Of a stretch of DNA of 64,000 bases, positions 13,951 through 61,908 are shown in pieces. The stretch is taken from IMG/VR virus record IMGVR_UViG_3300033388_007730, positions 155,189-219,188 of that record; one strand, 5' to 3'. The number at the start of each line of letters is the position of its first letter. The first letter of the stretch is position 1. The position numbers were made by a program, and so were the translations under genes. The notes under the pieces were generated by a model that saw only the letters and a program-made list of their open reading frames with translations, made no database searches and was not told where the DNA came from.

Positions 13951-13955
13951 TTATA

Positions 13956-13997
13956 ATATCCCCCAACATTCATTGTGATATTGGGGGATATTTTTTT
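13956..13997. terminator. Bidirectional terminator between convergent genes
   Basis: atatcccccaa/ttgggggatat stem plus T run. Confidence 0.75.
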
Positions 13998-14409: not shown

Positions 14410-14419
14410 TTTACTCTCA

Positions 14420-22955: not shown

Positions 22956-23018
22956 ATGGAGGAAATGGAGGAAATGGAGGAAATGGAGGAAATGGAGGAA
23001 ATGGAGGAAATGGAGGAG
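22956..23018 (+). repeat. Tandem repeat (ATGGAGGAA) x7, last unit imperfect
   Basis: Six perfect 9-mers plus ATGGAGGAG. Confidence 0.95.
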
Positions 23019-23124
23019 CATCAGAATGTGCTGCTGATTTTGAAACTTTGATAAGATTCGTGGAAAGACAAAAAGATGAGTAAAATTAAGAATGTAAATT
23101 AAAAATTAATATAGGAGAAAAAAA

Positions 23125-28823: not shown

Positions 28824-28853
28824 TTATGATGAAGTTTTTTTAAGGATGTAATA

Positions 28854-29859: not shown

Positions 29860-29888
29860 TTGAAAGTGATTATTTTTTATGGTATAAT
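29860..29888 (+). promoter_or_regulatory. Promoter TTGAAA-N17-TATAAT ahead of sigma genes, probably leaderless
   Basis: ATG 6 nt after the -10. Confidence 0.65.
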
Positions 29889-29894
29889 ATCGTT

Positions 29895-31110: not shown

Positions 31111-31843
31111 TATGGTTAAAGGAAGTCCATTAATACATAAAGGTGTTAAAACAAAAATTGATACTATAGGAGAATTGATATATTCTTATAGGATAGCAAA
31201 GGGATTAACTCAGGTAGATTTAGGAAAAGCTATAGGAACATATATAAGAGTATATAAATTTGAAGAGTTTAGTCCAATGATACTTAAATATGAAAAAGGG
31301 TATGCCTTGCCAGGTTGTCACAATATTTATATGTTATCAGAAGTTCTTGGCATAGAAAAAGAACCTTTTTTTAATATGGTTCTTAAAGAACATTATAATA
31401 GATTTATCGAAAAACATCATGAGAAATTTTTTCAAGTTATTAGGATGATGGAAAAGGGAAAAGAGCTATCATCTATTGATACACTATGTAGATATGTTTT
31501 CTGCCATGAAGGAAAATTGAAACATAATTTTTCTAAATCTTCTAAGATATTAAAAAATGCTTTTTGGAAAAAAAAGATTACTGATAAGATTACTTATAAG
31601 TCAATGGCTATTGAATTGAATAGTCGTGATGGGACGCGATATTATGATTACCGCGATCTTTGTAATATAATGCATGGCAGAAGATTACTTAGTTTAAGAG
31701 TCTTATTTGAAATATGCGATTATTTAGAAATAGAATCATTTAAATTACATAAAACAATAGTAGAAGAAAGAGCATTTGCTCATGCGGTAAATATGATGGA
31801 ACAATGGGAAATTTGTAAACAAGAAAGAAAAAATAATGGATAA
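31097..31843 (+). CDS. Tandem XRE-type HTH protein
   Basis: R..KGLTQ.DLG..IG, YEKG...P; second degenerate HTH. Confidence 0.7.
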   Translation: MIRNSMVKGSPLIHKGVKTKIDTIGELIYSYRIAKGLTQVDLGKAIGTYIRVYKFEEFSPMILKYEKGYALPGCHNIYMLSEVLGIEKEPFFNMVLKEHYNRFIEKHHEKFFQVIRMMEKGKELSSIDTLCRYVFCHEGKLKHNFSKSSKILKNAFWKKKITDKITYKSMAIELNSRDGTRYYDYRDLCNIMHGRRLLSLRVLFEICDYLEIESFKLHKTIVEERAFAHAVNMMEQWEICKQERKNNG

Positions 31844-49853: not shown

Positions 49854-49956
49854 AGTAGCGATAAGGACTTATAAAAAAATTTAAGAAAAAAAAAGGATTT
49901 TGTCTTTTTTCATAGTATGTGTATTCAATATTTTTTAATATTTTTTGAAAAAAGTA

Positions 49957-49984
49957 TTGACATTTTGGAATAATATGTTATAAT
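49957..49984 (+). promoter_or_regulatory. Promoter TTGACA-N16-TATAAT with extended TG
   Basis: Perfect hexamers upstream of Ro60 gene. Confidence 0.75.
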
Positions 49985-50059
49985 ACTTGAATAACATATT
50001 GTAAAGTTGTTATAAAGTATCTAAATTTTTAATTAGGTTGATTTTAGGGAGGATCAAAA

Positions 50060-51799
50060 ATGAGTAAGTATGCAAGTAATGTAACAAATCCACGTACACC
50101 ACAAAGCAAAAAAGCTAAGAGTAGTCAAGTTAAGAATAATGCTGGAGGATATGTATTCCAGGTTGATGATTGGACTCGTCTTAATCGTTTCCTTATTCTT
50201 GGTAATGAGGGAGGATCTTATTACGCTTCAGAGAATGAGATGTCTAATGATAACTATGATGTCATTAAGAGGTGTATGGCATTGGATAGTAAGAGAACAG
50301 TTGACACTATTGTTCAAATCAGTGATGAGGGTAGAGGTATCAAAAATGCCCCAGCTGTATTTGCTCTTGCTGTTTGTAGCGTATTCGGAGATCAGCAAAC
50401 AAGGTCTTATGCTAATAAGGTGATGCCAAAAGTAGCTAGGTATTCTACCGATCTATTCTCATGGGTAGATGCAGTTAATATTCTTAAAGAAGGACGTAAG
50501 GGTAAAGGAATGCTTCGAGCTATCGGAAGATGGTATACAGAGAAAGATGCTAATAATCTGGCATATCAAATCTGTAAATATCCATCACGTTCTATCGGTG
50601 GTCATAAGTGGGGTCACGCTGACCTGCTTCGTCTAGCTAGAATTTCTCCACCTGCTGCTAATGGTAAACCAGCTAAAGGTGGAAAGGCTTTAACTCTTCC
50701 ATCTGATGATCATGGTATTCTTTTGAAGTACGCTGTACATGGAGTTACATCTCCTCAAGAAATTGATGAGAGAGCTAAGTTAGCAGAGTCTACTGGTAAG
50801 GCACAAGAGAAAGCTGGTATTACTTCTGAGCAACTGGATGGGTTGAAGGATACCCCTTTGAAATATGTATATGCTCATGAGATGTGTAAGAAGGCTAATA
50901 CAGCAAATAAGGTAGTTGCGGTTATTAAGAAATATAAAGTTTCTAGAGAGTCTGTTGCTCCAAATCTAAGGAACGATAAAAAAGTTCAAAGGGCTTTATT
51001 GCCAAGTATGCCTATGACAGCTTTAATTAGGAACCTTGGTGGAATGACTGCTTCTGGTTTGTTGAAGCCATTGTCAGATGAGACTGCGATTGTTATTGAC
51101 AAGATTAGTAATAAAGAGAATCTTAAGAAAGGTCGTATTCATCCTATGAGCGTTTTGCTTGCTATGAAAGTTTATGAGCAAGGACATGGAATGAGAACTA
51201 GTTGGGAGCCAGTTCCACAAATCATAGATGCTCTTGAGAATAGTTTTTACGCAGCATTTAATTACGTAGAGCCAACAGGTAAGAAGTATTTACTTGGCAT
51301 TGATGTTAGTGGGTCTATGGATTGGGACAAGTTGTCTGAGAAAGTTCCAATGACTTCTGCTCAGTGTGCTGCTGCGGTAGCAATGACAATCGCTAGAACA
51401 GAGAAGAATTATCAAATGATGGCTTTTACTAGTATTTTCAAGAAATTGAATATCACAGCAAAAGACAGATTGGGAACAGTTCTTCGCAAGACTAGTGGTA
51501 TGGCTTTCGGCAGTACAGATTGTTCATTGCCAATGCAATATGCTAGCAAGCACGAACTTGATGTTGATGCTTTTGTTGTTCTTACAGATAGTGAGACTTG
51601 GTTTGGTGGAGTCCATCCATTTCAGGCTCTGAAGAGCTACAGGAGAAAGTTCAACAAAAATGCTAAGCTTATTGTTCTAGCATTCGAGGCAAATAGATTT
51701 AGTATTGCTGATCCAAGTGATGCTGGCATGATGGATATTGTAGGTATGGATAGTAATGTACCACGGATTCTATCAGAATTTGTCTCAGGGAAGCTTTAA
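50060..51799 (+). CDS. Ro60/TROVE-vWA RNA-binding protein
   Basis: NNAGGY.F, RFLILG.EGGSYY, W.H.DLLRL, MP.TALIRNL, IHP, DVSGSM, TDC.LPM, TDSETW. Confidence 0.95.
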   Translation: MSKYASNVTNPRTPQSKKAKSSQVKNNAGGYVFQVDDWTRLNRFLILGNEGGSYYASENEMSNDNYDVIKRCMALDSKRTVDTIVQISDEGRGIKNAPAVFALAVCSVFGDQQTRSYANKVMPKVARYSTDLFSWVDAVNILKEGRKGKGMLRAIGRWYTEKDANNLAYQICKYPSRSIGGHKWGHADLLRLARISPPAANGKPAKGGKALTLPSDDHGILLKYAVHGVTSPQEIDERAKLAESTGKAQEKAGITSEQLDGLKDTPLKYVYAHEMCKKANTANKVVAVIKKYKVSRESVAPNLRNDKKVQRALLPSMPMTALIRNLGGMTASGLLKPLSDETAIVIDKISNKENLKKGRIHPMSVLLAMKVYEQGHGMRTSWEPVPQIIDALENSFYAAFNYVEPTGKKYLLGIDVSGSMDWDKLSEKVPMTSAQCAAAVAMTIARTEKNYQMMAFTSIFKKLNITAKDRLGTVLRKTSGMAFGSTDCSLPMQYASKHELDVDAFVVLTDSETWFGGVHPFQALKSYRRKFNKNAKLIVLAFEANRFSIADPSDAGMMDIVGMDSNVPRILSEFVSGKL

Positions 51800-51820
51800 T
51801 CTGTATTTTTTTAACAAATA

Positions 51821-51852
51821 GGGGGGTGGTAGCTGTGCTATCACCCTTTTTT
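51821..51852 (+). terminator. Rho-independent terminator
   Basis: gggtggtagc/gctatcaccc plus T run. Confidence 0.8.
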
Positions 51853-51853
51853 C

Positions 51854-51878
51854 AATTCCGCCAGAGTGAAAAAATTAT
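51854..51878 (+). repeat. Intergenic repeat AATTCCGCCAGAGTGAAAAAATTAT, copy 1 of 4
   Basis: Other copies at 52452, 59193, 61841. Confidence 0.85.
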
Positions 51879-51894
51879 TAACTTATAGGAATAT

Positions 51895-52452
51895 ATGAAA
51901 GAATATAAAACAATTTATCTTGACCCACCCTGGAATGAGTATGGTGGTGGAAAAGTTAAAAGAGGAGCAGATAGACACTATCCTCTTATGAAGACAAAAG
52001 ATATTATCAATATGAAAGATTTTATTGAAAGTATCTCTGAGAATAACAGCCATTTGTATATGTGGGTGACTAATAATTTTTTACCAGATGGTCTAAAAGT
52101 TTTAGATGCTTGGGGATTTAGATATATCACAAAAATAGATTGGTTCAAAGAGGGGAAGATAGGACTAGGACAATACTATAGAGGTATTACTGAGTCTTGT
52201 TTATTTGGGGTGAAAGGAAAATTGCCTTATAAGGTAATCAATGGCAATCGGCAACAAGGTATAACAGGCTTCACTGCTCCAAGAGGGAGACACTCGCAGA
52301 AACCAGAGTTCATGAGGGAACAGATAGAAAGAGTCTCTTATCCTCCTTTTGTTGAGATATTTGCTAGACCACAAGATAATGACATATTTGTGGATTCTGA
52401 TAAAGTTAAATGGGACTATATGGGAAATGAGGCAGATGGGACAAATTTCTAA
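51895..52452 (+). CDS. MT-A70-family N6-adenine methyltransferase
   Basis: DPPW, HY..M, LYMWVTN, WGFRY, G.G.Y.R..TE, HS.KP. Confidence 0.9.
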   Translation: MKEYKTIYLDPPWNEYGGGKVKRGADRHYPLMKTKDIINMKDFIESISENNSHLYMWVTNNFLPDGLKVLDAWGFRYITKIDWFKEGKIGLGQYYRGITESCLFGVKGKLPYKVINGNRQQGITGFTAPRGRHSQKPEFMREQIERVSYPPFVEIFARPQDNDIFVDSDKVKWDYMGNEADGTNF

Positions 52453-52479
52453 ATTCCGCCAGAGTGAAAAAAATTATAA
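52452..52479 (+). repeat. Intergenic repeat copy 2
   Basis: aattccgccagagtgaaaaaaattataa. Confidence 0.85.
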
Positions 52480-52514
52480 TTAGTATGTTGTGATACTAAA
52501 TAATAGTTGTTGTA

Positions 52515-53120
52515 ATGAGAAAGGGAATACTAATGTCGGTAGCTGAAAGAAACAGATATTTACAGATTCTTTATAAGAATGGTGCTAATAGAAAACAAGT
52601 TTCTATTATCATGAAAGACATTGATGAGAGTAATATTTTTGCCGAAGAAGATATCATCGATATTTATGATGAAGATGATGATTTCAACCGTGTAGCAGAA
52701 ATTCTTTTCAGCAAAACTGCAACAAAAGAAGAAAAAATGGAGGCTGAGAAGTCTTTGAATGAGGAAAAATTAGGGAATAAGATTAGTAAAAAAGGAAAGT
52801 TAAAAGTAACCGAAGCAATGATACTAAAAAAGCAAAGAGAATACATTGCTGCTAATCTTGTTTTAGAAGATGATGAGGATGAAGAGCAAGAAGATTTTGG
52901 CTCTATTGATGAACAAGATGCAAGGTTAGAGGCTCACGCCAGATATGGGCGTAGTCCATTACATGAAGCGATAGCTTATAGAGAGATAGAGTATGTTAAG
53001 AAGTGCATAAAAGAAGGAAAATATCTTGATGCTATCGACAACAATGGACATACTCCTAGAGAAATGGCTTTTTATGATGGCTGGATGGATGCAGTTAAAT
53101 TGTTTAGTGAGGTTTGTTAA
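52515..53120 (+). CDS. Acidic protein with C-terminal ankyrin repeats
   Basis: GRSPLHEAI..V..I..G....D..G.TP. Confidence 0.75.
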   Translation: MRKGILMSVAERNRYLQILYKNGANRKQVSIIMKDIDESNIFAEEDIIDIYDEDDDFNRVAEILFSKTATKEEKMEAEKSLNEEKLGNKISKKGKLKVTEAMILKKQREYIAANLVLEDDEDEEQEDFGSIDEQDARLEAHARYGRSPLHEAIAYREIEYVKKCIKEGKYLDAIDNNGHTPREMAFYDGWMDAVKLFSEVC

Positions 53121-53143
53121 TTTTTTTTAGAAGGAGATGTAGT

Positions 53144-53578
53144 ATGAGATTTTTGGTAAATGGTAGAGTTTATGATATAAGGTTCGGAAAGCAGTATCGT
53201 ATTGATCATTTTGGCAGGGCATTGTTCCCTCTTGAGGACACCAGATGTACGATCAGTACAGTAGATGAAAGCATTCAGGGTCCTGAGAAGTATGAATGTG
53301 TTGGTGAAGGAATGGCTTATCTTAGCCATAACGATGAACAGGATTACGACAAGTGGGTAGGCAGGAAGTTGGCATTTGGAAGAGCTTTGCATCGGTTTGG
53401 TAAAGAGGATCGTGCCGAGTTTTGGAGAATATATAAAGATCGTTTTCCAGGACGTAAATTTGAGGTTGCAGTATCTATGGATGGTTGCAAAGAAGCGAAT
53501 ACTATCGCATTTTGTATCAGGAACATTGAGGATTTGCCTCAACCAGAGCGGGCTACAACAGTTGGGGAATCCGTATAG
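53144..53578 (+). CDS. Hypothetical phage protein
   Basis: AAGGAG RBS; D.YDK.VGRKLAF.RAL. Confidence 0.7.
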   Translation: MRFLVNGRVYDIRFGKQYRIDHFGRALFPLEDTRCTISTVDESIQGPEKYECVGEGMAYLSHNDEQDYDKWVGRKLAFGRALHRFGKEDRAEFWRIYKDRFPGRKFEVAVSMDGCKEANTIAFCIRNIEDLPQPERATTVGESV

Positions 53579-53609
53579 GATTCTAAGTTAAAAGCATAGT
53601 TATTTAAGT

Positions 53610-53644
53610 AGGATGTTGGGATTGTTTCTCAACATCCTGTTTTA
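53610..53644 (+). terminator. Terminator-like hairpin
   Basis: aggatgttggga/tctcaacatcct plus T run. Confidence 0.65.
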
Positions 53645-53773
53645 CTAATTAGTGGGAAAAGAAAAGGTGATGGCCCAAACAAAATAACAAATAATAATAC
53701 ACGGGTAGTAGGAATAAGCGGGTTTAAAGCTATTAAATTTTATAAATTAATTAAAGATTTAGAAATTCCTAAA

Positions 53774-55069
53774 ATGGAAAGTAAATGGGATGTTTTTGAG
53801 AATGAGATTAATGATAAAGGTGAATATTTTTATTTAGAGGATTTAAGTAAAAATCGAAAGAGAGGAAAAATGGAAAATTTTGTAAAAATGCTTAAAGATT
53901 GTAGTAAACAACATCCAGCTAGAGTTATGAATTTTGATGATTTAGTTACAGGATTGTTCTATGAGGTTGATTCTGGTAACATAAATGTTAATTATCATCC
54001 ATTATATCCCCAGTTGGCTATATTCAAATATACTCAAAATTGTGTTGTAGAAAGAAATTGGAATCAGTTTACTCTTGTTGCAAGGGGTCTTATACTTGAT
54101 CTTGAAGATGAGAAGGTTATTGCTACACCTTTCATAAAATTTCATAATTATAATGAAATTATAGAGTCTAAAAATTTCATAGAAGCTAAGTTTGTAGCTA
54201 CAGAAAAAGTTGATGGGTCTATGGGTATAATCTTCCATTACGATGAGAGATGGATGGTAGCAACTTGTGGTTCTTTTATATCTGAACAAGCACAGTGGGC
54301 AAGAGAGTGGTTGTACAAGAATGTTGTTGTACAAGATATGGATGTTACAAATACTTATCTGGTAGAAATAATATATCCAGAGAATAAGATTGTAGTGTCT
54401 TATGACTTCTCAGGTTTAGTCTTGCTTGCGGTTTACGATAAGTTTGGCTTGGAATATACTCAAGAGTTATTACAAGCAGAGTCTTCTTATCTTAAACTTA
54501 GAAAAGTGAAAGAATATGATTTCAGGAACATTGATCAAATTCTTAAACTTGCTAAGAAGCTTGATCATAATCAAGAAGGATTTGTTATCAGATTTGGTAG
54601 CGGTGTTAGGCTTAAAGTAAAGGGTGATGAGTATGTACGTATTCATCGTCTTATATCAAAGGTTACACCTATAGCAATTTGGGAAGCACTGCTTCATGGT
54701 GATGATTTAGCTGAGGTAAAGAAGGATCTTCCAGAAGAATTAGAGAAAGATTTCAATGCTATTATTGCTCTTTTGGAAGAGAAGTTGTCTATCTTCATAC
54801 AAGAAGTAGAGACAATGTGTGAGAACACAAAGAGTATGTCTGATAGAGAACTTGGTATGTATATGCAACAACGGCCAGAGGCATTTGCTGGTGGAGAATT
54901 CCCAGAAAGTAAGAGATATATCTTCATGATGAGAAAAGGGAAGTTTTATCAGGCTTTAGATGATACTGATTCTAAAGGGCGTAGGCAGTTGTTCAAAGTA
55001 TTTAAGCCTAAGTCTAATGTTCTTGATGGATATCGTCCATCTTCTGTTGTAAATCGTTTCATACAGTAA
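53774..55069 (+). CDS. T4 Rnl1-like RNA ligase
   Basis: ARGLI, PF.KF.N, EKVDGSMG, ATCGSF.SEQA, EGFV, K.K...Y; start may be 53870. Confidence 0.9.
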   Translation: MESKWDVFENEINDKGEYFYLEDLSKNRKRGKMENFVKMLKDCSKQHPARVMNFDDLVTGLFYEVDSGNINVNYHPLYPQLAIFKYTQNCVVERNWNQFTLVARGLILDLEDEKVIATPFIKFHNYNEIIESKNFIEAKFVATEKVDGSMGIIFHYDERWMVATCGSFISEQAQWAREWLYKNVVVQDMDVTNTYLVEIIYPENKIVVSYDFSGLVLLAVYDKFGLEYTQELLQAESSYLKLRKVKEYDFRNIDQILKLAKKLDHNQEGFVIRFGSGVRLKVKGDEYVRIHRLISKVTPIAIWEALLHGDDLAEVKKDLPEELEKDFNAIIALLEEKLSIFIQEVETMCENTKSMSDRELGMYMQQRPEAFAGGEFPESKRYIFMMRKGKFYQALDDTDSKGRRQLFKVFKPKSNVLDGYRPSSVVNRFIQ

Positions 55070-55113
55070 AATGGTGGGATAGGTGAAATTTTTTCACCTT
55101 TTCCCCATTTTTT
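55069..55113 (+). terminator. Terminator-like hairpin
   Basis: aggtgaaa/tttcacct inner stem with flanking pairing and T run. Confidence 0.6.
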
Positions 55114-55115
55114 GG

Positions 55116-55143
55116 TTGAAAGTGAATAAGAAAAGAGTATAAT
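55116..55143 (+). promoter_or_regulatory. Promoter TTGAAA-N16-TATAAT
   Basis: Shared TTGAAAGTGA start. Confidence 0.6.
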
Positions 55144-55178
55144 TGAAATAGTTATATTACTTATACTATGGAGATTAT

Positions 55179-55622
55179 ATGAATACACAAAAAAAGAAGT
55201 ATGTACCAGTGTCATGTTATGTTGATGAAAATTGGATGGATATTGGAGGTAACATATATCCTAAAGAGGGGTTAGTCACATCTAAAGAATTTACAGATGA
55301 CATAAATATACAATTTGGTTTGTATGGTATTCTTTGGGGACAGACTGATTATCTACTTTATGAAAAAACTAAGAATAGTAATTGGGTAGTTGTCAAGGTG
55401 GAACTTGATAACAATTTTATTGTTGTAGATAAGTTCCACAATAGAGTAAAGTTCAAAGATGGGATGATACTTTGTTCTGGAAGTATTCGGAAAACAGGAA
55501 GATTCTTATGGAATAATAGAAATGTTTCTTCACAATATTTTTGTGATCCACCAAAAGATATTAAAGAAGAAGAAATAGTAGGTACTAGTTCGTGGATGAA
55601 AGAATTTAGAGGTAAAAACTAA
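55179..55622 (+). CDS. Hypothetical protein
   Basis: GGAG RBS; GL.G.LWG..W.VV.V..VKF..G. Confidence 0.7.
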   Translation: MNTQKKKYVPVSCYVDENWMDIGGNIYPKEGLVTSKEFTDDINIQFGLYGILWGQTDYLLYEKTKNSNWVVVKVELDNNFIVVDKFHNRVKFKDGMILCSGSIRKTGRFLWNNRNVSSQYFCDPPKDIKEEEIVGTSSWMKEFRGKN

Positions 55623-55659
55623 TGATCTTCATTGGTGATGTTAATTTAAGGAGTTTAAA

Positions 55660-55839
55660 ATGGGAATAATTTTAATTGGACTTTATGTTTTTGTTTGTAT
55701 GATGTGGGGAATTTTTGCTATTCGGATGCAGATAATAACTTATCCTGAGAAAAGAAGTAGATTACGATTACTATGTGTTTTTGCGGTGAATTTTATATTA
55801 TGCCCATTTTTAATCTTGGTGGCAACCGTTAAGCTGTGA
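55660..55839 (+). CDS. Small two-helix membrane protein
   Basis: AAGGAG RBS; read by hand. Confidence 0.6.
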   Translation: MGIILIGLYVFVCMMWGIFAIRMQIITYPEKRSRLRLLCVFAVNFILCPFLILVATVKL

Positions 55840-55941
55840 AGAGTAAAATATTTTTTATAGTATATTTTACATGGAAAATTAAAGGAGTTTTTAATTAAAA
55901 TCCGAATAAGTATAATAGATATAATTTTTAGGAGATCTATT

Positions 55942-56850
55942 ATGCTTGTTGAATGCGAAAATTGTGGTGAATTAGTTAAAAAATCACCAAGCCACGTTAA
56001 AACACTAAAACATATTTTTTGTGGTAAAAAATGTAGAACAGAATATCGTTTTCTGAATAAAAAAAATAGTAAGTTCTTTGAAAATATAAATACTGAAGAG
56101 AAAGCCTATTGGTTGGGTTTTATTTGTGCTGATGGATGGATGTGTAATAGAGATCCATCTTTTGGGGTAGGATTATCATCGGTAGATAAAATTCATCTGA
56201 TGAAATTTGCCAGATTATTTGATGCTAAAATAATAGAAAATACCAGAGTAGTCCATGGAAAAATATATTATAGAGTTCAAATTCAAGTGTATAATCCTTT
56301 TTTGTATGAGCAATTATTGAGCAAAGGTGTAGTTCCTAATAAAAGTTTAATAAATCGTTTAGATGTTTTTAAATATGTTCCTAAATATTTAAGTTCTCAT
56401 TTCGTAAGAGGGTGGTTCGATGGAGATGGAAGCATATATATAAATAAAGTTAAATGTGCGAATACTTTTTCTATCTGTGGAACTAAGGGTAATTTGAGGA
56501 AAATACAAAGTATGATATTAAATGGTGTTGAAAATTTACGAGTTACAAAAATAAAATCTACTAAAGGTATTTTTGCTTTAGAATGGGGAGGAAGTCATCA
56601 GGCAATTGCTATTAGGAATTGGCTCTACAATGATGCTACTGTTTTTTTATCTCGTAAGAAAGAAAAATTTAATAAGGTTGTAAGAAAAATAGGGAAAAAG
56701 ACTTCTGATTATAGGGGAGTTCATTGGAACAAAGAAAATGAAAAATGGATAGCTCAAATTACTTACAATAAAAAAGTTCATTATTTAGGATCTTTTAGAG
56801 AAGAAGAAATGGCAGCTTTAGCATATACTAAAGCTTTGATAAATGTTTAG
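55942..56850 (+). CDS. LAGLIDADG homing endonuclease with N-terminal zinc finger and C-terminal AP2 domain
   Basis: KAYWLGFICADG, FVRGWFDGDG, S.YRGV.W...KW.A.I....YLG.F..E..AA.AY. Confidence 0.88.
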   Translation: MLVECENCGELVKKSPSHVKTLKHIFCGKKCRTEYRFLNKKNSKFFENINTEEKAYWLGFICADGWMCNRDPSFGVGLSSVDKIHLMKFARLFDAKIIENTRVVHGKIYYRVQIQVYNPFLYEQLLSKGVVPNKSLINRLDVFKYVPKYLSSHFVRGWFDGDGSIYINKVKCANTFSICGTKGNLRKIQSMILNGVENLRVTKIKSTKGIFALEWGGSHQAIAIRNWLYNDATVFLSRKKEKFNKVVRKIGKKTSDYRGVHWNKENEKWIAQITYNKKVHYLGSFREEEMAALAYTKALINV

Positions 56851-56880
56851 ATTAAAAATAAAATAGATTAAGAGAGGTGT

Positions 56881-57561
56881 ATTACGTATTTTTTAGGCGA
56901 CTGTCATGGCAGTTTTAAGACTTATCATTATATCCTTTTTAACATGCAGCATAAAGGAGATAGGAAAGGTGTAGACTGTTCTTTTCAAGTTGGAGATATG
57001 GGGATAGGTTTTCCTGGGAAAGAATTTCCGTATCATAGAGATGGGAAAACTTGGTTTCCACCTATTGATAAAAATCATAAATTCATAAGGGGAAATCATG
57101 ATGATCCTGTAATGTGCAGTGAGCATCCTAATTGTGTTGATGACTGGGGTCATTTCCCTACTCCAGATATTTTTTGGATAAGTGGTGGTTTCTCTGTAGA
57201 TTATATGTACAGAACCCCTGACATTGACTTATGGGAATATGAGGAGTTAGAGGAGCATCAGTTTGAGCAAGCTATGGAACTTTATAAAAAAGTGAAACCT
57301 AGGATAATGGTTTCTCATGAAGGTCCACTTGTTATAAAATATGACGTTATAACTAACCCGATAAAGGAAGTAATTATTACTCGTACTGAGAGACATCTTC
57401 AAAAGATGTTTGAGGTTCATCAGCCAGAGTTTTGGATTTTTGGACATCATCACATAAGGAAAAATATTTGGGTTCAAGGAACTCAATTTGTTGCTCTTGG
57501 AGAGTTTAAGTTCGGAAAGATAAGTGATAGTATTTATGAGATGCCAAATTTAAAATGGTAG
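56881..57561 (+). CDS. Calcineurin-like metallophosphoesterase; start non-canonical
   Basis: GDCHG upstream of ATG 56944 in frame; QVGD.G, RGNHD, SH.P, FGHHH. Confidence 0.85.
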   Translation: MTYFLGDCHGSFKTYHYILFNMQHKGDRKGVDCSFQVGDMGIGFPGKEFPYHRDGKTWFPPIDKNHKFIRGNHDDPVMCSEHPNCVDDWGHFPTPDIFWISGGFSVDYMYRTPDIDLWEYEELEEHQFEQAMELYKKVKPRIMVSHEGPLVIKYDVITNPIKEVIITRTERHLQKMFEVHQPEFWIFGHHHIRKNIWVQGTQFVALGEFKFGKISDSIYEMPNLKW

Positions 57562-57573
57562 AAGGAAAGATGT

Positions 57574-58350
57574 ATGTTAGGTTCAATAATTGGTGATGTA
57601 ATTAGTTCTGTGTATGAGTGTAGCAAGACAAAAGAAATTGATTTTCTTTTGTTCAGCGAAAAGACAAAGTTTACAGATGATACTGTCTTAACTATAGCTA
57701 CTGCTTATGCTATAATAAAGAAAACAAATTTTGGATCTACATATAAAATATTTGTAAATGATTATCCAGACAGAGGTTATGGTGGGAAATTCCGTCAGTG
57801 GATGAAATCTGCTAGTCTCGAACCATACGATAGTTGGAGTAATGGCTCAGCTATGAGAGTTGGTTCTATTGGATTTGCTTTTAATAGTATAGAAGAGGTA
57901 TTGGCAGAAGCAAAGAGAAGTGTTGCTTGTACTCATAACCATCCAGAGGGCATTAAAGGTGCGCAAGCTATAGCTTTGGTTATATATCTTGCCCGTATGA
58001 GATATGGAAAGCTTGATATAAAGAAGATGATAACACATAATTTTGGTTATGATCTTGATAGAACAATAGATGAAATTAGACCAGATTATGCATTTAATGG
58101 ATCTTGTCAAGAGACAGTACCAGAAGCTATTATTGCTTTTTTAGATTCAACTGATTTTGAAAGTACTATTAGGTTGGCAATTTCTTTGGGTGGAGACAGT
58201 GATACTTTAGCTTGTATTGTTGGTGGAATTGCTGAAGCATATTATAATTTAATACCGATGAATATATCAGAGCCAGTAGTAGCTCTCTTATCAGATGAAT
58301 TTCAGCAAGTGATAGTTGATTTTTATAAATATTTGGGGGAGAAAAATTAA
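57574..58350 (+). CDS. ADP-ribosylglycohydrolase
   Basis: G.IIGD, FTDDT, NGSAMR, TH.HPEG, GGDSDT. Confidence 0.93.
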   Translation: MLGSIIGDVISSVYECSKTKEIDFLLFSEKTKFTDDTVLTIATAYAIIKKTNFGSTYKIFVNDYPDRGYGGKFRQWMKSASLEPYDSWSNGSAMRVGSIGFAFNSIEEVLAEAKRSVACTHNHPEGIKGAQAIALVIYLARMRYGKLDIKKMITHNFGYDLDRTIDEIRPDYAFNGSCQETVPEAIIAFLDSTDFESTIRLAISLGGDSDTLACIVGGIAEAYYNLIPMNISEPVVALLSDEFQQVIVDFYKYLGEKN

Positions 58351-58355
58351 GAGAA

Positions 58356-58679
58356 ATGAGATTAGAATATGCTGAAATGGGGCTGCATAATTTTCATATA
58401 GCATTAGGAACAACTTTAAGTGTTTTAGAACTTTATAATATTGAACGTTTTAGCAATAAGATGTATAGAAAAATTATTTATGGGACTACAGATCCTTTAG
58501 AAATAAGTGTATTGTCAGAAGTTTATGATAAACAATATAAAATGATATTTGATAAAGTTGATAAATTAGATTATATTATTATGAATATATGTAATGGAGA
58601 TGGATGGGAAAAATTATGTTCCTTTTTAGGGGATGACATTCCATCTGCTGAATTTCCACATTTGGGAAAAAGAAAATAA
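58356..58679 (+). CDS. Sulfotransferase-like C-terminal fragment
   Basis: GDGWEKLCSFLG..IP...FPH; PAPS-binding N-terminus absent. Confidence 0.55.
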   Translation: MRLEYAEMGLHNFHIALGTTLSVLELYNIERFSNKMYRKIIYGTTDPLEISVLSEVYDKQYKMIFDKVDKLDYIIMNICNGDGWEKLCSFLGDDIPSAEFPHLGKRK

Positions 58680-59194
58680 TGAATAATGAAGAAAAATTAA
58701 AATTACAGATGTCATCTGATAGAGAATGGGCTAGAATGAGAGATCATCAAGCTGCTTTATTAAGTATATTGACTATGAGAAAGCCTTCCGAATTAGATGT
58801 TCTTTGGAGCATGGGGTGTATAGGATTAATTTATGGTGATTTAATGCTCTACAAAGAAAATTTTGGGGAAGAAAGCATTAAGAAAGAATTAGATCATATT
58901 AATAAAAATCCCAAGGGTAAATTAGAAAGTTTTTCAGAGGATATAGATGCTTTCTCTAAGTTATTTGATGTAGATGTCAGCGTGGAAGATAAACAAAGTG
59001 TTATGGAGAAGATGCGCAAAAGATTATGGATTGGTGTAATAGGTGAAGAAAGTAGACTAAATTATCTTGTTAATAATTTTGGTGATGTCAGAGATGAAAT
59101 GGATATAATGTTTATTTATAAATGCGTTGCTCTGGTGTGTTTTGAATTAAAGATAAGAGAGATAGAGATTAAGATACTAGAGGGAGATTTCTAA
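58679..59194 (+). CDS. Helical hypothetical protein, likely paralog of 60521
   Basis: DR.W...R ... W ... E...REI..LE pattern in both. Confidence 0.6.
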   Translation: MNNEEKLKLQMSSDREWARMRDHQAALLSILTMRKPSELDVLWSMGCIGLIYGDLMLYKENFGEESIKKELDHINKNPKGKLESFSEDIDAFSKLFDVDVSVEDKQSVMEKMRKRLWIGVIGEESRLNYLVNNFGDVRDEMDIMFIYKCVALVCFELKIREIEIKILEGDF

Positions 59195-59209
59195 TTCCAC
59201 CAGAGTGAA
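59193..59209 (+). repeat. Intergenic repeat copy 3 (one mismatch)
   Basis: aattccaccagagtgaa. Confidence 0.75.
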
Positions 59210-59262
59210 TTTTTTTAAAACTTATATATTGAGAATATGTTTATTTGAAAGGCTTTTAGAGT

Positions 59263-59664
59263 ATGGATGTTAAAGAGTATAACAAGCACAAAGACGCATT
59301 TAAAGAATATTACACAGATTTAGAGAAAGCTGTTAAAGTATTACAGGAAAAATATTCTCCAGGTTATGATGATGGTACAAAAATAGAAAGTTTTGATTTT
59401 GACGCAGAAATAGTGCATGTGCAGTATGAGCGACATCCTAATTGTGGCTGTTGTGGCAGCGATTATGATGGAGATGAATTGCCTATAGATATTGCTACAC
59501 CAGAAGGACTTGAAAGGTATATTAAGGAAAGAGATGAAGAAATAAAAAGATATAAGGAGAATGAAAAAGCAAGAAAAAGGAGAGAGGAAAGGCAGAAAAA
59601 AATTGCTGCTGAAGAGGCGAGAAGAAAAACATACGAAGAATTAAAGGCGGAATTTGATGATTAA
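59263..59664 (+). CDS. Hypothetical protein with coiled-coil tail
   Basis: CGCC; ends YEELKAEF. Confidence 0.7.
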   Translation: MDVKEYNKHKDAFKEYYTDLEKAVKVLQEKYSPGYDDGTKIESFDFDAEIVHVQYERHPNCGCCGSDYDGDELPIDIATPEGLERYIKERDEEIKRYKENEKARKRREERQKKIAAEEARRKTYEELKAEFDD

Positions 59665-60052
59665 ATATGAATATCATGGAACGAAAGAACAAGGACAGTT
59701 AGACAATATTACTGTCGCTGTAAAAGAAGCTCATCATTATGGTGCTAGTATCAATTGTGATTTAACACATGTTGAGAGACATAGCCCAGATGGGTTCCAA
59801 TGGGGATATGGGGGAAGTGGTCCTGCTGATCTGGCATTATCTATCTTAATTCATTTTTGTAAAAAAAGAGATTTATTACCAGAAGTTGCTGAGAAATACT
59901 ATCAAGAGTTTAAAGCTGCTTTTATTGTCCCTGCTGACAATGAACTAAAAATAACATGTAAGGATATAGCTAGATGGCTAGCTGATAAAGATCCTCAATT
60001 GGAAGATGTATTGTTTGAAGAAAGAAAGGATGATTATGAACAGAAGGCATAA
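59654..60052 (+). CDS. DUF6166-like protein
   Basis: HSPDGFQWGYGGSGPADLALSIL, YQ.FK. Confidence 0.75.
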   Translation: MMIKYEYHGTKEQGQLDNITVAVKEAHHYGASINCDLTHVERHSPDGFQWGYGGSGPADLALSILIHFCKKRDLLPEVAEKYYQEFKAAFIVPADNELKITCKDIARWLADKDPQLEDVLFEERKDDYEQKA

Positions 60053-60506
60053 GGGAAAAATGGATATAGAGATAGATGGATTTGTGATATTCTTAATAGG
60101 GGTATTTGTTGTACTCCCTCTTGCAAGAACCGTCATAAATAAATTTCCAGGTGGAAGTGAATCTCCAGTATCAGAGGTAAGAGATGGAGAAACACCTGTA
60201 GAAGTTATTGCTGATGAGCTTGTCTCTACAACTTCTTCGGCTGTATTTGCTAAGTTTAAGTCAATAGATTTATCTAGTGGAGAGAAAGTTGCTAATATCA
60301 ATGAAGGTGTTAGATTTAATGTAGAAGATGATGTAGTAAAAGTGACTTCTAAATCTCCTAGCGGAGAAGAAGGAAAATTAGAGATTAAAAAGTATTTAAG
60401 GAATAGGTATGTTGGTGCTGTCTTTAATGAAGAAGGAACGTGGGAAATTACGTTTTACGACAAAGATGGTTTTGCATTAAATTGGCATAAAATAAGTGTT
60501 TATTAA
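60006..60506 (+). CDS. Membrane-anchored hypothetical protein
   Basis: Single TM segment; true start probably downstream (60036 or 60060). Confidence 0.6.
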   Translation: MYCLKKERMIMNRRHKGKMDIEIDGFVIFLIGVFVVLPLARTVINKFPGGSESPVSEVRDGETPVEVIADELVSTTSSAVFAKFKSIDLSSGEKVANINEGVRFNVEDDVVKVTSKSPSGEEGKLEIKKYLRNRYVGAVFNEEGTWEITFYDKDGFALNWHKISVY

Positions 60507-60520
60507 GGAGGAGTGTTATA

Positions 60521-61036
60521 ATGCAAAATAATGATCCTTATATGCAACATATGATAGCTACAACTGATCGTTTGTGGATAGAGTTAAGAGAATATAACAA
60601 AGATATTGTTGATTATTTGAGTGGTGATGACAATATTGATTTTGAAGTTATTAACAAGATATTGCATATCTCACTTAGACTAATCATCTCTGAATTATTG
60701 GTTAATAAAGAAGAGTATGAGAAATATCCAGTGAAAAATTTGGATATTGATGAATTCATTCAATTGACTATTGTAGATTCTGGTAAAAAGAAGTTTGATT
60801 ATAATAACCAGGAAGAATGTGAAAAGTTTATGGAGGAGATTAGAGCAATAATATGGGGGTATATCAAACAGTATTATGAGGAATTAAGTGATATTATTAT
60901 TGCTGTAATCGGAGATAAGAGTAGGCAACTAACACAGAGTAATTATGATCGTTTAACGGAGTGTGTCTGTGTAGCGTATATTGAATCTAATTTTAGAAAA
61001 AGAGAAATACACTTTTTAGAAAGAGAATTTGAGTAA
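60521..61036 (+). CDS. Helical hypothetical protein
   Basis: AGGAGG RBS. Confidence 0.7.
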   Translation: MQNNDPYMQHMIATTDRLWIELREYNKDIVDYLSGDDNIDFEVINKILHISLRLIISELLVNKEEYEKYPVKNLDIDEFIQLTIVDSGKKKFDYNNQEECEKFMEEIRAIIWGYIKQYYEELSDIIIAVIGDKSRQLTQSNYDRLTECVCVAYIESNFRKREIHFLEREFE

Positions 61037-61524
61037 TGCAGGAAAATGGTGATGAATTTCGTTTAAATCCGGAGTGGGAATCAATTGCAAATGAGAAAAA
61101 TGTTTTTGGTATGGCTACTGCTCTGTATTCAGATTTAAAGCAACATATGTTTAGTGGAGCATTTATTCCTCAAGAGTCAATCAGTCAGTTGATGCTTGTT
61201 GTGCAAAAAGTTTTGTATAATGATTTTGGGTGGAATGAGGGAGAGTTAAAAGCTTTAGATGATAAATTCGAGGAGTTAAACCAATATTATCTAGATAAAA
61301 TAGAGGGGTCTCATTCTCTACCACCTGCGGCGTTGATGGTTGCTCCTAATTCAATATCGACTGAAATGATGCCAGGAACAACTCATATTCATATGGAAAT
61401 TGTTAAGAATAGGAAGAACAGGAGTAAAATGTCATTTGTTAAAGACACTGTTATAGTGTTTTTTGAGATTGCAGTTTGTTGTTTGGCAATAATTGGATTG
61501 ATGGCTTTGATAGGACTTATATAG
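61036..61524 (+). CDS. Hypothetical protein with C-terminal TM helix
   Basis: TAATG overlap. Confidence 0.65.
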   Translation: MQENGDEFRLNPEWESIANEKNVFGMATALYSDLKQHMFSGAFIPQESISQLMLVVQKVLYNDFGWNEGELKALDDKFEELNQYYLDKIEGSHSLPPAALMVAPNSISTEMMPGTTHIHMEIVKNRKNRSKMSFVKDTVIVFFEIAVCCLAIIGLMALIGLI

Positions 61525-61784
61525 TGGATGAAGAGAAAAAAACTCTAAAAAAAGTAATGCCTTATGAATTTGACTCTTGCTCTTATGATGACACAAGAGC
61601 ATATAAGATGAAAGATGTTCTTGTTGGTGAAGAGCATTGTTCATTATTTGATCAGGATGAATATCAGCCATGGCCTGGGACTCATAAAAATGTGTATTTT
61701 TGGGTAGAGTTAGAGAATGGATATTCTGTAGGTTGGAATGAAAATCCTGCGAGAGGGTGGAGCTTTCCAGTTATAAAATCATAA
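61476..61784 (+). CDS. Hypothetical phage protein
   Basis: WPG.HKNV..W..LENG..VGWNENP.RGWSF; start uncertain. Confidence 0.6.
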   Translation: MLFGNNWIDGFDRTYIVDEEKKTLKKVMPYEFDSCSYDDTRAYKMKDVLVGEEHCSLFDQDEYQPWPGTHKNVYFWVELENGYSVGWNENPARGWSFPVIKS

Positions 61785-61800
61785 TAAATACTTTATTTGA

Positions 61801-61840
61801 GGGGTAATATGGTGTTTTTTACAGCTATAGCCCCTTTTTT
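61801..61840 (+). terminator. Terminator-like hairpin
   Basis: gggg...cccc imperfect stem plus T6. Confidence 0.55.
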
Positions 61841-61868
61841 AATTCCGCCAGAGTGAAAAAAATTATAA
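61841..61868 (+). repeat. Intergenic repeat copy 4
   Basis: aattccgccagagtgaaaaaaattataa. Confidence 0.85.
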
Positions 61869-61908
61869 CTAATATATTGTAAATGATAATTTTTGAAAAG
61901 GAATGTAA

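What the first reader, a model, noticed from the sequence alone, without database searches (positions are those of the whole stretch)
51854..61868. Four-copy intergenic element AATTCCGCCAGAGTGAA(AAAAATTATAA)
Copies at 51854, 52452, 59193 and 61841 all have the same orientation, sit immediately after a terminator or stop codon, are GC-rich against the background, and are confined to the last 12 kb. Copies 1 and 2 flank the MT-A70 gene as a cassette and copy 4 precedes the other methyltransferase. Candidates: early-gene promoter/operator, recombination site for cassette shuffling, or a Chi-like signal (reverse strand CTGG[CT]GG).
Basis: partly seen in the sequence, partly recalled or inferred. 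Interest (0 to 1): 0.62.

Follow-up and report, generated by a model that had tools for sequence, protein, structure and literature searches.

The report
Huge-phage promoter cassette motif
The four repeats are copies of a phage-specific promoter element that relatives of this huge gut-type phage carry in dozens of copies in a gene-shuffling region starting right after their Ro60 gene; one copy pair marks a relocated DNA-methyltransferase gene, and the spacing of the element hints at an unusual way of starting transcription.

Summary
AATTCCRCCAGAGTGAA occurs four times in the 219-kb virus contig, always on the coding strand and always intergenic (chance expectation 0.13). It is the upstream half of a two-part element: 15 nt further comes a TAnnnT hexamer followed by a purine.

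The same 16-mer occurs 14 times in about 51 kb read from a related 386-kb phage scaffold. A syntenic relative carries a co-varying variant (TTCTGCCAAAGCGTA) at orthologous positions. Three more distant relatives, one a complete 548-kb genome, carry TTCCAGACAA-type versions in 23-54 copies. These fill a 65-90 kb domain that starts just after Ro60, which explains why our copies sit in the last 12 kb: the contig ends there.

Best reading: a phage-specific promoter class, not a host motif (the GTDB scan gave chance hits only). MT-A70, flanked by copies 1 and 2, is absent at this site in all eight relatives examined and sits elsewhere in the complete relative, as in T4 PeSL cassettes. A general excess of the motif at synteny breaks was not found.

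One oddity: an invariant purine, and in 17 of 98 relatives' copies the start codon, directly abuts the hexamer. Canonical promoters in these genomes use hexamer+N6. The reader protein and the true start site are unresolved. The Chi-like idea is rejected.

The parts
51820..51853 (+). Intrinsic terminator after the Ro60 gene (14-bp stem, loop UGU, U6), immediately 5' of copy 1
   Evidence: -18.9 kcal/mol, z -4.98; sequence
51854..51892 (+). Copy 1: the 17-mer AATTCCGCCAGAGTGAA (51854-51870), an A/T spacer and a degenerate hexamer TAGGAA (51886-51891). The MT-A70 ATG follows at 51895, leaving almost no leader
51895..52452 (+). MT-A70 family DNA methyltransferase gene (185 aa), a single-gene unit bracketed by copies 1 and 2. 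It is lineage-specific at this site
   Evidence: Pfam PF05063 1.3e-17 and PHROG 359. It is absent after Ro60 in L088, L089, L090 and L091-L095. The ortholog lies elsewhere in G003, and the ancestral site in our genome is empty
52452..52490 (+). Copy 2: the 17-mer (52452-52468, overlapping the MT-A70 stop TAA 52450-52452), spacer, hexamer TATGTT (52484-52489) and G at 52490. The downstream gene starts at 52515
59193..59231 (+). Copy 3: the 17-mer AATTCCACCAGAGTGAA (59193-59209, overlapping stop TAA 59192-59194), a T-rich spacer, hexamer TATATT (59225-59230) and G at 59231. The downstream gene starts at 59263
59263..59664 (+). 133-aa ORF served by copy 3. ORF and motif copy are both missing between the orthologous neighbours in the syntenic relative L088
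   Evidence: no homolog in L088; there the flanking genes 9228-9743 and 9763-10110 are adjacent
61799..61840 (+). Hairpin + U6 terminator immediately 5' of copy 4
   Evidence: -15.5 kcal/mol, z -2.6
61841..61879 (+). Copy 4: the 17-mer (61841-61857), spacer, hexamer TATATT (61873-61878) and G at 61879. The leader TGTAAATGATAATTTTTGAAAAGGAA is shared with two copies in the related scaffold, and the 512-aa ORF starts at 61909
   Evidence: It is positionally orthologous to the second variant copy in L088
49957..49984 (+). For contrast: a canonical sigma-A type promoter (TTGACA-16-TATAAT with TG) upstream of Ro60. This shows a second, host-type promoter class in the same region
   Evidence: 12/12 match. 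A second one lies at 55116-55143, orthologous to one in L088
29860..31110 (+). Candidate trans-acting genes: a canonical promoter (29860-29888, hexamer+6 nt+ATG, leaderless geometry) followed by two tandem small sigma-70-family genes (29895-30512 and 30505-31110). This is an inferred link only

Best explanation
The four repeats are the upstream recognition block of a phage-specific promoter class.

Anatomy. Each full unit reads [A/T][A/T]TTCCGCCAGAGTGAA, then 15 A/T-rich nt, then TAnnnT, then a purine. It sits on the coding strand in the gap before a gene or gene cluster, often straight after a terminator, a tRNA gene or a stop codon.

Distribution. The phage is a fragment (about 44%) of a roughly 0.5-Mb genome. 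It belongs to a clade of huge phages in which homologous units occur in 23-54 copies in the stretches read, one every 0.7-1.3 kb (median spacing). They fill a plastic 65-90 kb domain that begins just downstream of the Ro60 gene. Our contig stops 14 kb into that domain, so only four copies are seen.

How it is read (inferred). A phage-encoded DNA-recognising factor binds the G+C-rich block. It could be one of the three sigma-70-family proteins the phage encodes, or an activator working with host RNA polymerase. Its specificity has drifted between lineages together with all copies of the motif. Transcription most likely begins at the purine directly after the hexamer (window 52490, 59231, 61879; about 51892-51895 for copy 1).

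Side effect. Because the units are about 40-65 nt of near-identical sequence repeated in one orientation, they also act as homology patches at which genes are gained, lost or moved. The MT-A70 gene between copies 1 and 2 is such a case.

Shown: the repeat, its context, the fixed hexamer, its conservation and co-variation in relatives, and the MT-A70 relocation.
For: Non-random, one orientation, intergenic only:
-.
- The related scaffold BAEC19-1 scaffold_14 has 14 copies in about 51 kb read (11 in 21.8 kb of L078), all on the coding strand. Three begin at or within 2 nt of a tRNA 3' end; others follow terminators or stop codons.

Downstream element:
- TAnnnT lies exactly 15 nt after the block in 13 of 20 copies, against 3.6% at other offsets. 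That gives P about 1e-14, or 6 of 13 and P about 3e-6 after removing near-duplicates.

Orthology and co-variation:
- L088 (Ro60 71% identical, syntenic over 13 kb) has TTCTGCCAAAGCGTA + N15 + TAAAGT at the two sites orthologous to copies 1/2 and copy 4.

Clade-wide family:
- G001, G002 and G003 carry TTCCAGAC(AA) 54, 23 and 34 times in the stretches read, with at most 4 reverse copies each. TAnnnT is at the same register once our 3-nt GCC insertion is allowed for.
- The whole-record scan places nearly all copies in one domain that starts within 1 kb after Ro60; reversed-pattern controls give 0 in these three records.
- Scaffold_14 proteins have orthologs 55-70 kb downstream of Ro60 in these relatives.

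Not a host motif:
- The GTDB scan gave 10 single hits at the chance level (8.7 expected), all lacking the flanking similarity.
- The IMG/VR scan gave chance hits only.

A second, canonical promoter class exists in the same genomes.

Sigma genes.

Start site:
- The purine after the hexamer is invariant in 68 of 68 copies.
- ATG sits exactly there in 17 of 98, several with no Shine-Dalgarno, and there is no peak 6-7 nt later.
- Three of 20 copies in our lineage do the same.
- MT-A70 lies behind a strong terminator with its ATG only 3 nt after the degenerate hexamer.

Cassette.
Against: - There are no transcript data.
- The two blocks are spaced as a sigma-70 -35/-10 pair (17-18 nt), yet the start-codon data put the start 0 nt after the hexamer. 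A sigma-70-type open complex cannot do that. One of the two readings must be wrong, or the machinery is unusual.
- No reader was identified. The small sigma orthologs differ in their recognition helix among relatives that share one motif core. The SigH-like sigma is almost invariant although the motif differs between lineages.
- No phage RNA polymerase was detected.
- In some compact copies a GG-rich stretch just before the hexamer could serve as a ribosome-binding site. Those genes might then be translated from read-through transcripts.
- The motif is not enriched at synteny breakpoints.
Confidence: 0.75

Rival explanations
1. Canonical-geometry version. The G+C-rich block is a phage-specific -35 region (AGAGTG at -35..-30 plus an upstream extension) and TAnnnT is an ordinary -10. 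It is read by host core RNA polymerase with a phage sigma, or with host sigma-A plus a MotA-like activator. Transcription then starts 6-7 nt after the hexamer (about window 52496, 59237, 61885).
For: - The 17-18 nt spacing between AGAGTG/cAGACA and TAnnnT.
- T at -15 and often G at -14 (an extended -10) in the scaffold_14 copies.
- cAGACA in relatives matches TTGACA at 4 of 6 positions.
- The phage encodes three sigma-family proteins and no detectable polymerase.
Against: - 17 of 98 relatives' copies and 3 of 20 in our lineage put the ATG directly after the hexamer. That would lie upstream of such a start.
- There is no ATG peak at hexamer+6, although canonical promoters in the same genomes show exactly that geometry.
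- The base after the hexamer is a purine in 68 of 68 copies.
- MT-A70 would be left without a transcript: a terminator lies upstream, and the start would fall inside the ORF.
Confidence: 0.3
2. The element is mainly a recombination or mobility site (PeSL-like linker or attachment site for gene cassettes), and any promoter activity is secondary.
For: - MT-A70 is bracketed by two direct copies sharing about 35 nt. The site holds a single element or none in eight relatives, and the gene lies elsewhere in G003.
- Copy 3 plus a 133-aa ORF is an insertion relative to L088.
- An identical promoter+leader (about 60 nt, 82%) precedes unrelated genes in two phages.
- The T4-type PeSL precedent (PMC2839356, PMC4122927).
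Against: - In G001-G003 the motif is as frequent at conserved gene adjacencies (25%) as at boundaries or within lineage-specific blocks (Fisher P 0.3-1.0).
- The strict strand bias, the fixed hexamer and the distance to start codons are regulatory features that a recombination site does not need.
- No recombinase is linked to the copies.
Confidence: 0.15
3. The element acts in RNA. It would be a processing or cleavage signal that trims polycistronic transcripts just before the next gene, yielding leaderless mRNAs, or a binding site for a translational regulator.
For: - The invariant T|purine junction, with start codons placed exactly at it.
- Copies directly after tRNA genes, where processing occurs anyway.
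- The phage carries RNA-repair and RNA-handling genes nearby: Ro60, an RNA ligase, a CCA-adding-like enzyme and a tmRNA.
Against: - The motif region has no RNA structure and no Rfam match.
- Copies 1 and 4 follow strong terminators, so little upstream transcript would reach them.
- Inverted copies flank a canonical promoter upstream of the helicase gene, which suggests recognition as DNA.
- The minus-strand copy there also carries a hexamer in register.
Confidence: 0.07
4. A Chi-like recombination hotspot or other genome-wide DNA signal (packaging or replication), read on the reverse strand as CTGG[CT]GG.
For: Only the superficial likeness of CTGGCGG to E. coli Chi (own knowledge).
Against: - It has four copies only, none inside genes, all just upstream of start codons.
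- The sequence differs between related phages while position and architecture stay the same.
- It is absent from bacterial genomes beyond chance.
Confidence: 0.01

Closest known systems
PeSLs (promoter-early stem-loops) of T4-type phages (Arbiol et al. 2010, PMC2839356; Comeau et al. 2014, PMC4122927)
   Same: - Short composite promoter/terminator units repeated in one orientation in a hyperplastic region full of small orphan genes.
- Near one unit per gene or two.
- A lineage-specific gene flanked by two units where a relative has a single unit (RB49 ORF192 versus phi1; here MT-A70 versus L088 and seven other relatives).
- The units end at the Shine-Dalgarno sequence and ATG of the next gene.
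   Different: - PeSL promoters are strong canonical sigma-70 promoters read by the host holoenzyme. Here the -35 region is a phage-specific G+C-rich block, and the hexamer abuts the presumed start.
- Only copies 1 and 4 have an adjacent stem-loop.
- Mini-circles could not be looked for.
- The motif is not enriched at synteny breakpoints in the relatives.
T4 middle promoters (MotA box + sigma-70 -10, sigma appropriation by AsiA/MotA); own knowledge, also summarised in PMC5312081
   Same: - A conserved phage-specific box replaces the -35 hexamer and is combined with a TAnnnT element at fixed distance.
- It forms a second promoter class beside host-type promoters.
- T4 replication origins use such promoters. 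In relatives, paired copies lie beside iterons upstream of the helicase gene.
   Different: - The box sequence and length differ (16 nt versus 9 nt).
- No MotA or AsiA homolog was sought or found.
- The start-codon data place the start next to the hexamer, unlike T4.
Late promoters of jumbo-phage non-virion RNA polymerases (phiKZ TATG with G = +1, PMC4666361; AR9 AACA-N6-T-A/G with A/G = +1, PMC5312081)
   Same: The conserved element runs up to position -1, with T at -1 and a purine at +1. These promoters belong to very large phage genomes.
   Different: - Those phages encode split beta/beta' polymerases. None is detectable here, not even in the complete 548-kb relative.
- Our element has an additional long upstream block 15 nt away.
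Morons of lambdoid phages (own knowledge; discussed in PMC2839356)
   Same: Single accessory genes that carry their own promoter and terminator, inserted between conserved genes (terminator-copy 1-MT-A70; copy 3-ORF133).
   Different: Morons have no conserved flanking sequence. Here the flanks are copies of one repeated element.

Membership tests
Sigma-70-family bipartite promoter | Two conserved blocks separated by 17 +/- 1 bp | tested here: met
   AGAGTG (ours) or AGACAA (relatives) ends 17 nt before TAnnnT, and the register is identical in five genomes
Sigma-70-family bipartite promoter | -10 hexamer TAnnnT | tested here: met
   Present in 13 of 20 copies in our lineage and 68 of 98 in relatives. 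Window copies 2-4 have it; copy 1 is degenerate
Sigma-70-family bipartite promoter | Transcription start 5-8 nt after the -10 hexamer | tested here: inconclusive
   There are no RNA data. Indirectly contradicted: ATG lies at hexamer+0 in 17 of 98 copies and the purine there is invariant, while canonical promoters of the same genomes show hexamer+6
Sigma-70-family bipartite promoter | -35 hexamer resembling TTGACA (housekeeping sigma) | tested here: not met
   CAGAGT/AGAGTG matches at most 2 of 6 positions. The relatives' cAGACA matches 4 of 6
PeSL (T4-type mobile regulatory cassette) | Composite of promoter and stem-loop terminator in one intergenic unit | tested here: inconclusive
   Copies 1 and 4 have an adjacent strong hairpin + U-run; copies 2 and 3 have none
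PeSL (T4-type mobile regulatory cassette) | Lineage-specific genes flanked by units where relatives have one unit | tested here: met
   MT-A70 lies between copies 1 and 2. L088 has a single variant unit there, and the gene is relocated relative to G003
PeSL (T4-type mobile regulatory cassette) | Preferential association of units with indel or replacement breakpoints | tested here: not met
   In G001-G003 the motif frequency at conserved adjacencies equals that elsewhere. Divergence is high, so the test has low power
PeSL (T4-type mobile regulatory cassette) | Mini-circles formed by recombination between units | not testable with these tools
T7-like single-subunit RNA polymerase promoter | The phage encodes a T7-type RNA polymerase (PF00940) | tested here: inconclusive
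   No match in G000-G005, including the complete G003. But the tool's own control found this family in none of its 14 control genomes, so the negative proves little. The element also spans about 40 nt, longer than such promoters
phiKZ/AR9-type non-virion RNA polymerase promoter | The phage encodes multisubunit beta/beta'-like polymerase genes | tested here: not met
   PF00623 and PF00562 are negative in six records, with controls positive. The only DxDGD motifs in long ORFs of G003 lie in non-polymerase proteins, and the one in the 2035-aa structural protein is not conserved in our ortholog. Very divergent homologs cannot be excluded
T4 middle promoter (MotA-dependent) | MotA/AsiA-type activator and co-activator encoded by the phage | not tested
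   No search for MotA or AsiA homologs was run
Chi-type recombination hotspot | Over-represented throughout the genome including coding sequence, with the sequence fixed by the host RecBCD/AddAB | tested here: not met
   There are four intergenic copies only. The sequence varies between related phages, and it is absent from bacterial genomes beyond chance

The most novel reading that the evidence does not exclude
The clade uses a transcription-initiation mode not described for bacterial RNA polymerase. A about 40-nt promoter would carry a TAnnnT block at -6..-1, so that RNA starts at the purine directly after it and often at the A of the start codon (leaderless mRNA). It would be read either by host core enzyme with a fast-evolving phage factor of unusual geometry, or by a phage polymerase too divergent to detect. 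The same element would double as the homology patch that shuffles accessory genes in a 65-90 kb plastic domain of 0.3-0.55-Mb phage genomes.
Probability: 0.2. Interest if true: 0.75.

Novelty: new variant of a known kind. Interest (0 to 1): 0.45.

Why it matters
Huge phages known only from metagenomes have almost no mapped regulatory signals. This element gives a ready-made marker for one transcription class and for the boundaries of a hyperplastic accessory-gene domain that starts after Ro60 in a whole clade, one member of which is a complete 548-kb genome.

It also offers a natural co-variation series for finding the protein that reads it: TTCCAGACAA, TTCTGCCAAAGCGTA and TTCCGCCAGAGTGAA.

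It shows a concrete case of a defence-related gene (a DNA methyltransferase) moved to a promoter site.

If the start site really abuts the hexamer, it points to a non-canonical initiation mechanism and to wide use of leaderless mRNAs in these phages.

Tried and rejected
- IMG/VR scan for the 15-mer: 64 hits, all single and without flank similarity, so chance. The scan for the L088 variant gave one chance hit.
- GTDB genome scan: 10 single hits at the chance level, so it is not a host promoter or host repeat.
- Megablast of 14 kb against cultured phages: no match.
- Single-protein locus searches with Ro60 and the 512-aa protein in IMG/VR: nothing. An alignment-based search then worked.
No read-level test of start sites, circles or deletions was therefore possible, and read laying was not used.
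- Exact-protein look-up of the last complete gene, to extend the contig: it returned only the source contig. Three other look-ups returned no DNA and one found no record.
- Rfam: no family in 44-64 kb even at E<=1. No Y RNA was found beside Ro60.
- RNA folding of the motif and its leaders: no significant structure. The 5-nt AUUCC/GGAAU pairing with the ribosome-binding site seen in copies 1 and 4 is not general.
- Phage RNA polymerase: PF00623 and PF00562 were negative with positive controls. PF00940 was also negative, but its control rang in no genome, so that result is weak. A DFDGD hit in a 2035-aa protein of G003 is not conserved in our ortholog.
- Sigma co-variation: the recognition helices of the small sigma orthologs differ among relatives sharing one motif core, and the SigH-like sigma is nearly invariant. 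No assignment was possible. The word search for the 205-aa sigma found only short contigs.
- Test for an excess of the motif at synteny breakpoints: negative.
- L090 (Ro60 62%): a 26-nt repeat holding CCAGAG occurs twice but is not in register with a hexamer. It was left uninterpreted.

Full report
**Observation**

The 17-mer AATTCCRCCAGAGTGAA occurs at window 51854, 52452, 59193 and 61841, always on the + strand. Shuffled sequence gives 0.13 matches.

The window is the last 64 kb of a 219,188-bp IMG/VR virus record that CheckV rates 44% complete. The record has 32% G+C and every long ORF lies on one strand. The whole record has no further copy, and even the 8-mer CGCCAGAG occurs only inside the copies.

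- Copies 1 and 4 lie directly after hairpin + U6 terminators (-18.9 and -15.5 kcal/mol).
- Copies 2 and 3 overlap TAA stop codons.
- Start codons follow 24-53 nt after the 17-mer.

**Gene context**

The order along the strand is:

1. an AAA ATPase;
2. Ro60/TROVE (50060-51799);
3. terminator, then copy 1, then MT-A70 (51895-52452), then copy 2;
4. an ankyrin-like gene, an RNA ligase, a LAGLIDADG/AP2 endonuclease, a metallophosphatase, an ADP-ribosylglycohydrolase and others;
5. copy 3, then a 133-aa ORF and DUF6166;
6. terminator, then copy 4, then a 512-aa ORF with no family match.

**The unit is longer than 17 nt**

I aligned 20 copies from our phage and two relatives. The 16-mer ATTCCGCCAGAGTGAA carries most of the information. 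A second block follows at fixed distance:

| Position after ...GTGAA | Base | Copies |
|---|---|---|
| +13 | T | 17/20 |
| +15 | A | 18/20 |
| +16 | T | 19/20 |
| +17 | A | 16/20 |
| +21 | T | 16/20 |
| +22 | purine | 19/20 |

TAnnnT at +16 is present in 13 of 20 copies, against 3.6% at other offsets (P about 1e-14). After removing near-duplicates it is 6 of 13 (P about 3e-6). Window copies 2-4 have TATGTT, TATATT and TATATT followed by G. Copy 1 has TAGGAA, and the MT-A70 ATG comes 3 nt later.

**Relatives with the same motif**

A metagenome scan found the exact motif in SDBV01 contigs. These belong to a 386,529-bp scaffold, ENA BAEC19-1 scaffold_14.

- In about 51 kb of it that I read there are 14 copies, 11 of them within 21.8 kb.
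- All are on the coding strand and all are intergenic.
- Three begin at or within 2 nt of a tRNA 3' end; that stretch holds 31 tRNA genes.
- Others follow terminators or stop codons.
- Flanks differ between copies. However, the promoter plus leader of copy 4 (about 60 nt) is 82% identical to units that precede unrelated genes in that scaffold.

**A co-varying variant at orthologous sites**

Ro60 homologs are common on very large contigs. L088 has Ro60 at 71% identity and is syntenic with window 48.8-61.8 kb. It has no exact motif.

It carries TTTTCTGCCAAAGCGTAAAAAACTTGATCCTATAAAGT(G/A) twice. One copy follows the Ro60 terminator, at the site of copies 1/2. The other follows the terminator behind the ortholog of 61476-61784, at the site of copy 4. 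The hexamer TAAAGT is in the same register.

Both copies changed in the same way. That is what is expected if a trans-acting reader co-evolves with its sites.

**A clade-wide family, and why 'the last 12 kb'**

An alignment-based search brought in three IMG/VR relatives with Ro60 at 64-66% identity: G001 (297,710 bp), G002 (350,866 bp) and G003 (547,943 bp, CheckV 100%). They lack our motif. De novo counting of intergenic 10-mers shows that each has an abundant homologous one:

- AATTCCAGACAAGTGGTTTTTT in G001;
- AAAATTCCAGACAA(T/C)G.. in G002;
- TAATTTTCCAGACAAATG in G003.

| Record | TTCCAGAC on coding strand / reverse | Copies with TAnnnT 27 nt after the first T |
|---|---|---|
| G001 | 54 / 4 | 38/54 |
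| G002 | 23 / 2 | 13/23 |
| G003 | 34 / 3 | 25/34 |

This is the same register as ours once our 3-nt GCC insertion is allowed for.

Across whole records, TTCCAGACAA lies almost only in one domain. In G003 about 27 of the 32 coding-strand hits fall there:

- G001: 197,430-283,010;
- G002: 285,804-349,559, which is the contig end;
- G003: 243,219-157,765 on the coding strand.

In all three the domain starts within 1 kb downstream of Ro60, and the reversed-pattern controls give 0 in these records. Median spacing between copies is 0.7-1.3 kb.

Scaffold_14 proteins (a 600-aa protein and a PARP-like protein) have orthologs 55-70 kb downstream of Ro60 in these relatives and none in our 219 kb. So the motif-rich piece of scaffold_14 corresponds to the part of our genome that lies beyond the contig end. 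Our four copies are the first 12 kb of a much larger field.

**Not a host signal**

A scan of 185,579 species genomes gave 10 single hits against 8.7 expected. All lacked the flanking similarity.

**What it is**

Position, strand, the fixed second block, orthology and co-variation all point to a promoter class specific to these phages.

A second, canonical class is also present. Examples are TTGACA-16-TATAAT before Ro60 and TTGAAA-16-TATAAT before 55179. The second is orthologous to one in L088, and others exist.

The phage encodes three sigma-70-family proteins:

- a SigH-like one of 239 aa, 60-65% conserved in relatives;
- two tandem small ones of 205 and 201 aa, only 29-44% conserved.

The 205-aa sigma gene itself sits behind a canonical promoter with leaderless geometry: hexamer, 6 nt, then ATG (window 29860-29897). 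That fits a cascade from host sigma to a phage factor to the motif class. This cascade is inference only.

No phage RNA polymerase was detectable, even in the complete G003. The T7-type search is weak evidence, because its control rang in no genome.

The recognition helices of the small sigma orthologs differ among G001-G003, which share one motif core. The SigH-like helix is nearly invariant although the motif differs between lineages.

**Where transcription starts**

The two blocks are spaced like -35 and -10 (17-18 nt), which predicts a start 6-7 nt after the hexamer. Four observations argue against that:

- Of 98 intergenic copies in G001-G003, 68 have the hexamer, and the next base is a purine in 68 of 68.
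- In 17 copies it is the A of an ATG that opens a 49-284-aa ORF. Several of these have no Shine-Dalgarno.
- There is no second peak 6-7 nt later. Three of 20 copies in our lineage behave the same way.
- MT-A70, shut off from upstream by a strong terminator, has its ATG 3 nt after the degenerate hexamer.

Canonical promoters in the same genomes use hexamer+6+ATG. The contrast is therefore internal to these genomes.

I favour a start at the purine abutting the hexamer, with roughly even odds. This resembles the T(-1)/R(+1) late promoters of phiKZ and AR9 (PMC4666361, PMC5312081), although their polymerases are absent here. Only 5'-end mapping can settle it.

**Cassette question**

MT-A70 is absent directly after Ro60 in all eight relatives examined: L088, L089, L090 and L091-L095.

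G003 has an ortholog at 75% identity, higher than its neighbours at 44-52%. It sits 42 kb upstream of Ro60, inside a tight operon between an 85-aa and a 204-aa gene. In our genome those two genes are adjacent, 17 nt apart, without MT-A70.

So the gene has moved, or was exchanged, to the promoter site, where it is bracketed by direct copies sharing about 35 nt. That is the product expected from a single crossover between a circle carrying unit+gene and the resident unit, as proposed for T4-type PeSLs (PMC2839356).

Copy 3 with its 133-aa ORF is likewise an insertion relative to L088.

A general test failed, however. In G001-G003 the motif is no more frequent at synteny boundaries than at conserved adjacencies. 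Power was low, because only 29-45 reciprocal best hits link each pair of domains.

**Side observation bearing on the mechanism**

Upstream of the helicase gene, scaffold_14 has 22-bp iterons. Next to them are two inverted pairs, CTCTGGCG-N19-CGCCAGAG.

G001 has TTGTCTGGAA-N20-TTCCAGACAA twice at the corresponding place, flanking a canonical promoter. G002 and G003 show the same pattern in the rows.

The inverted copies use each lineage's own core. The same factor therefore probably binds there as well. This could be an operator, or a promoter-driven origin as in T4. It was not followed further.

**Verdict**

This is a real, functional repeat: a lineage-specific promoter cassette of a clade of huge phages. 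It is seen here at the truncated edge of its domain.

The kind is known (phage-specific promoters, PeSL-like cassettes). The sequence family, its domain organisation and its odd geometry appear new.

Noticed in passing
window 28442-28826 (+): A full-length tmRNA gene (Rfam RF00023, 108 bits) is encoded by the phage. ARAGORN did not report it.
   Followed up: no
window 50060-51799 (+) and its upstream gap 49854-50059: The phage encodes a Ro60/TROVE + vWA protein behind a perfect canonical promoter. Homologs at 60-91% identity are widespread on very large contigs. No Y RNA or other Rfam family was found nearby, even at E<=1.
   Followed up: partly
L076:19800-20300 (scaffold_14); L205:6180-6370 (G001:242,180-242,370): Upstream of the helicase gene there are 22-bp iterons (with an assembly gap) and two inverted pairs of the lineage's own motif core, 19-20 bp apart. 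In G001-G003 these pairs flank a canonical promoter. This may be an operator or a transcription-activated origin.
   Followed up: partly
window 29860-31843 (+); G000:C1:149715-150434: Two tandem small sigma-70-family genes (205 and 201 aa) lie next to a 248-aa protein with an HTH_3 match and a weak Wmk-like match. A separate SigH-like sigma (239 aa) is also present. The first sigma gene has leaderless geometry behind TTGAAA-17-TATAAT.
   Followed up: partly
window 55942-56850 (+): A LAGLIDADG + AP2-domain gene (probable homing endonuclease) is inserted between genes that are adjacent in relative L088. L088 has a related gene elsewhere (13681-14496).
   Followed up: no
L088:1727-2944: An IS605-type OrfB/TnpB (Cas12f-like) gene is inserted between the AAA ATPase and Ro60 in this relative. 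A similar gene lies near Ro60 in the P0007 contig.
   Followed up: no
L078:560-9340 (scaffold_14): An array of 31 tRNA genes covers most amino acids and is interspersed with motif copies.
   Followed up: no
G000:C1:150502-151404 (L073:2165-3067); window 1734-4400: Two accessory genes unusual for a phage: a FabD-type malonyl-CoA:ACP transacylase (TIGR00128, 2e-83) and an 888-aa protein with a tRNA nucleotidyltransferase domain.
   Followed up: no
window 7715-7986 and 22956-23031: Coding tandem repeats: a serine-rich 21/24-nt array and a 9-nt GGAAATGGA array.
   Followed up: no
L088:13095-13132; G000:C1:44771-44808, 96694-96732: Canonical promoters are followed by exactly 6 nt and an ATG, with no ribosome-binding site. 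Leaderless mRNAs therefore seem common in this phage clade.
   Followed up: partly
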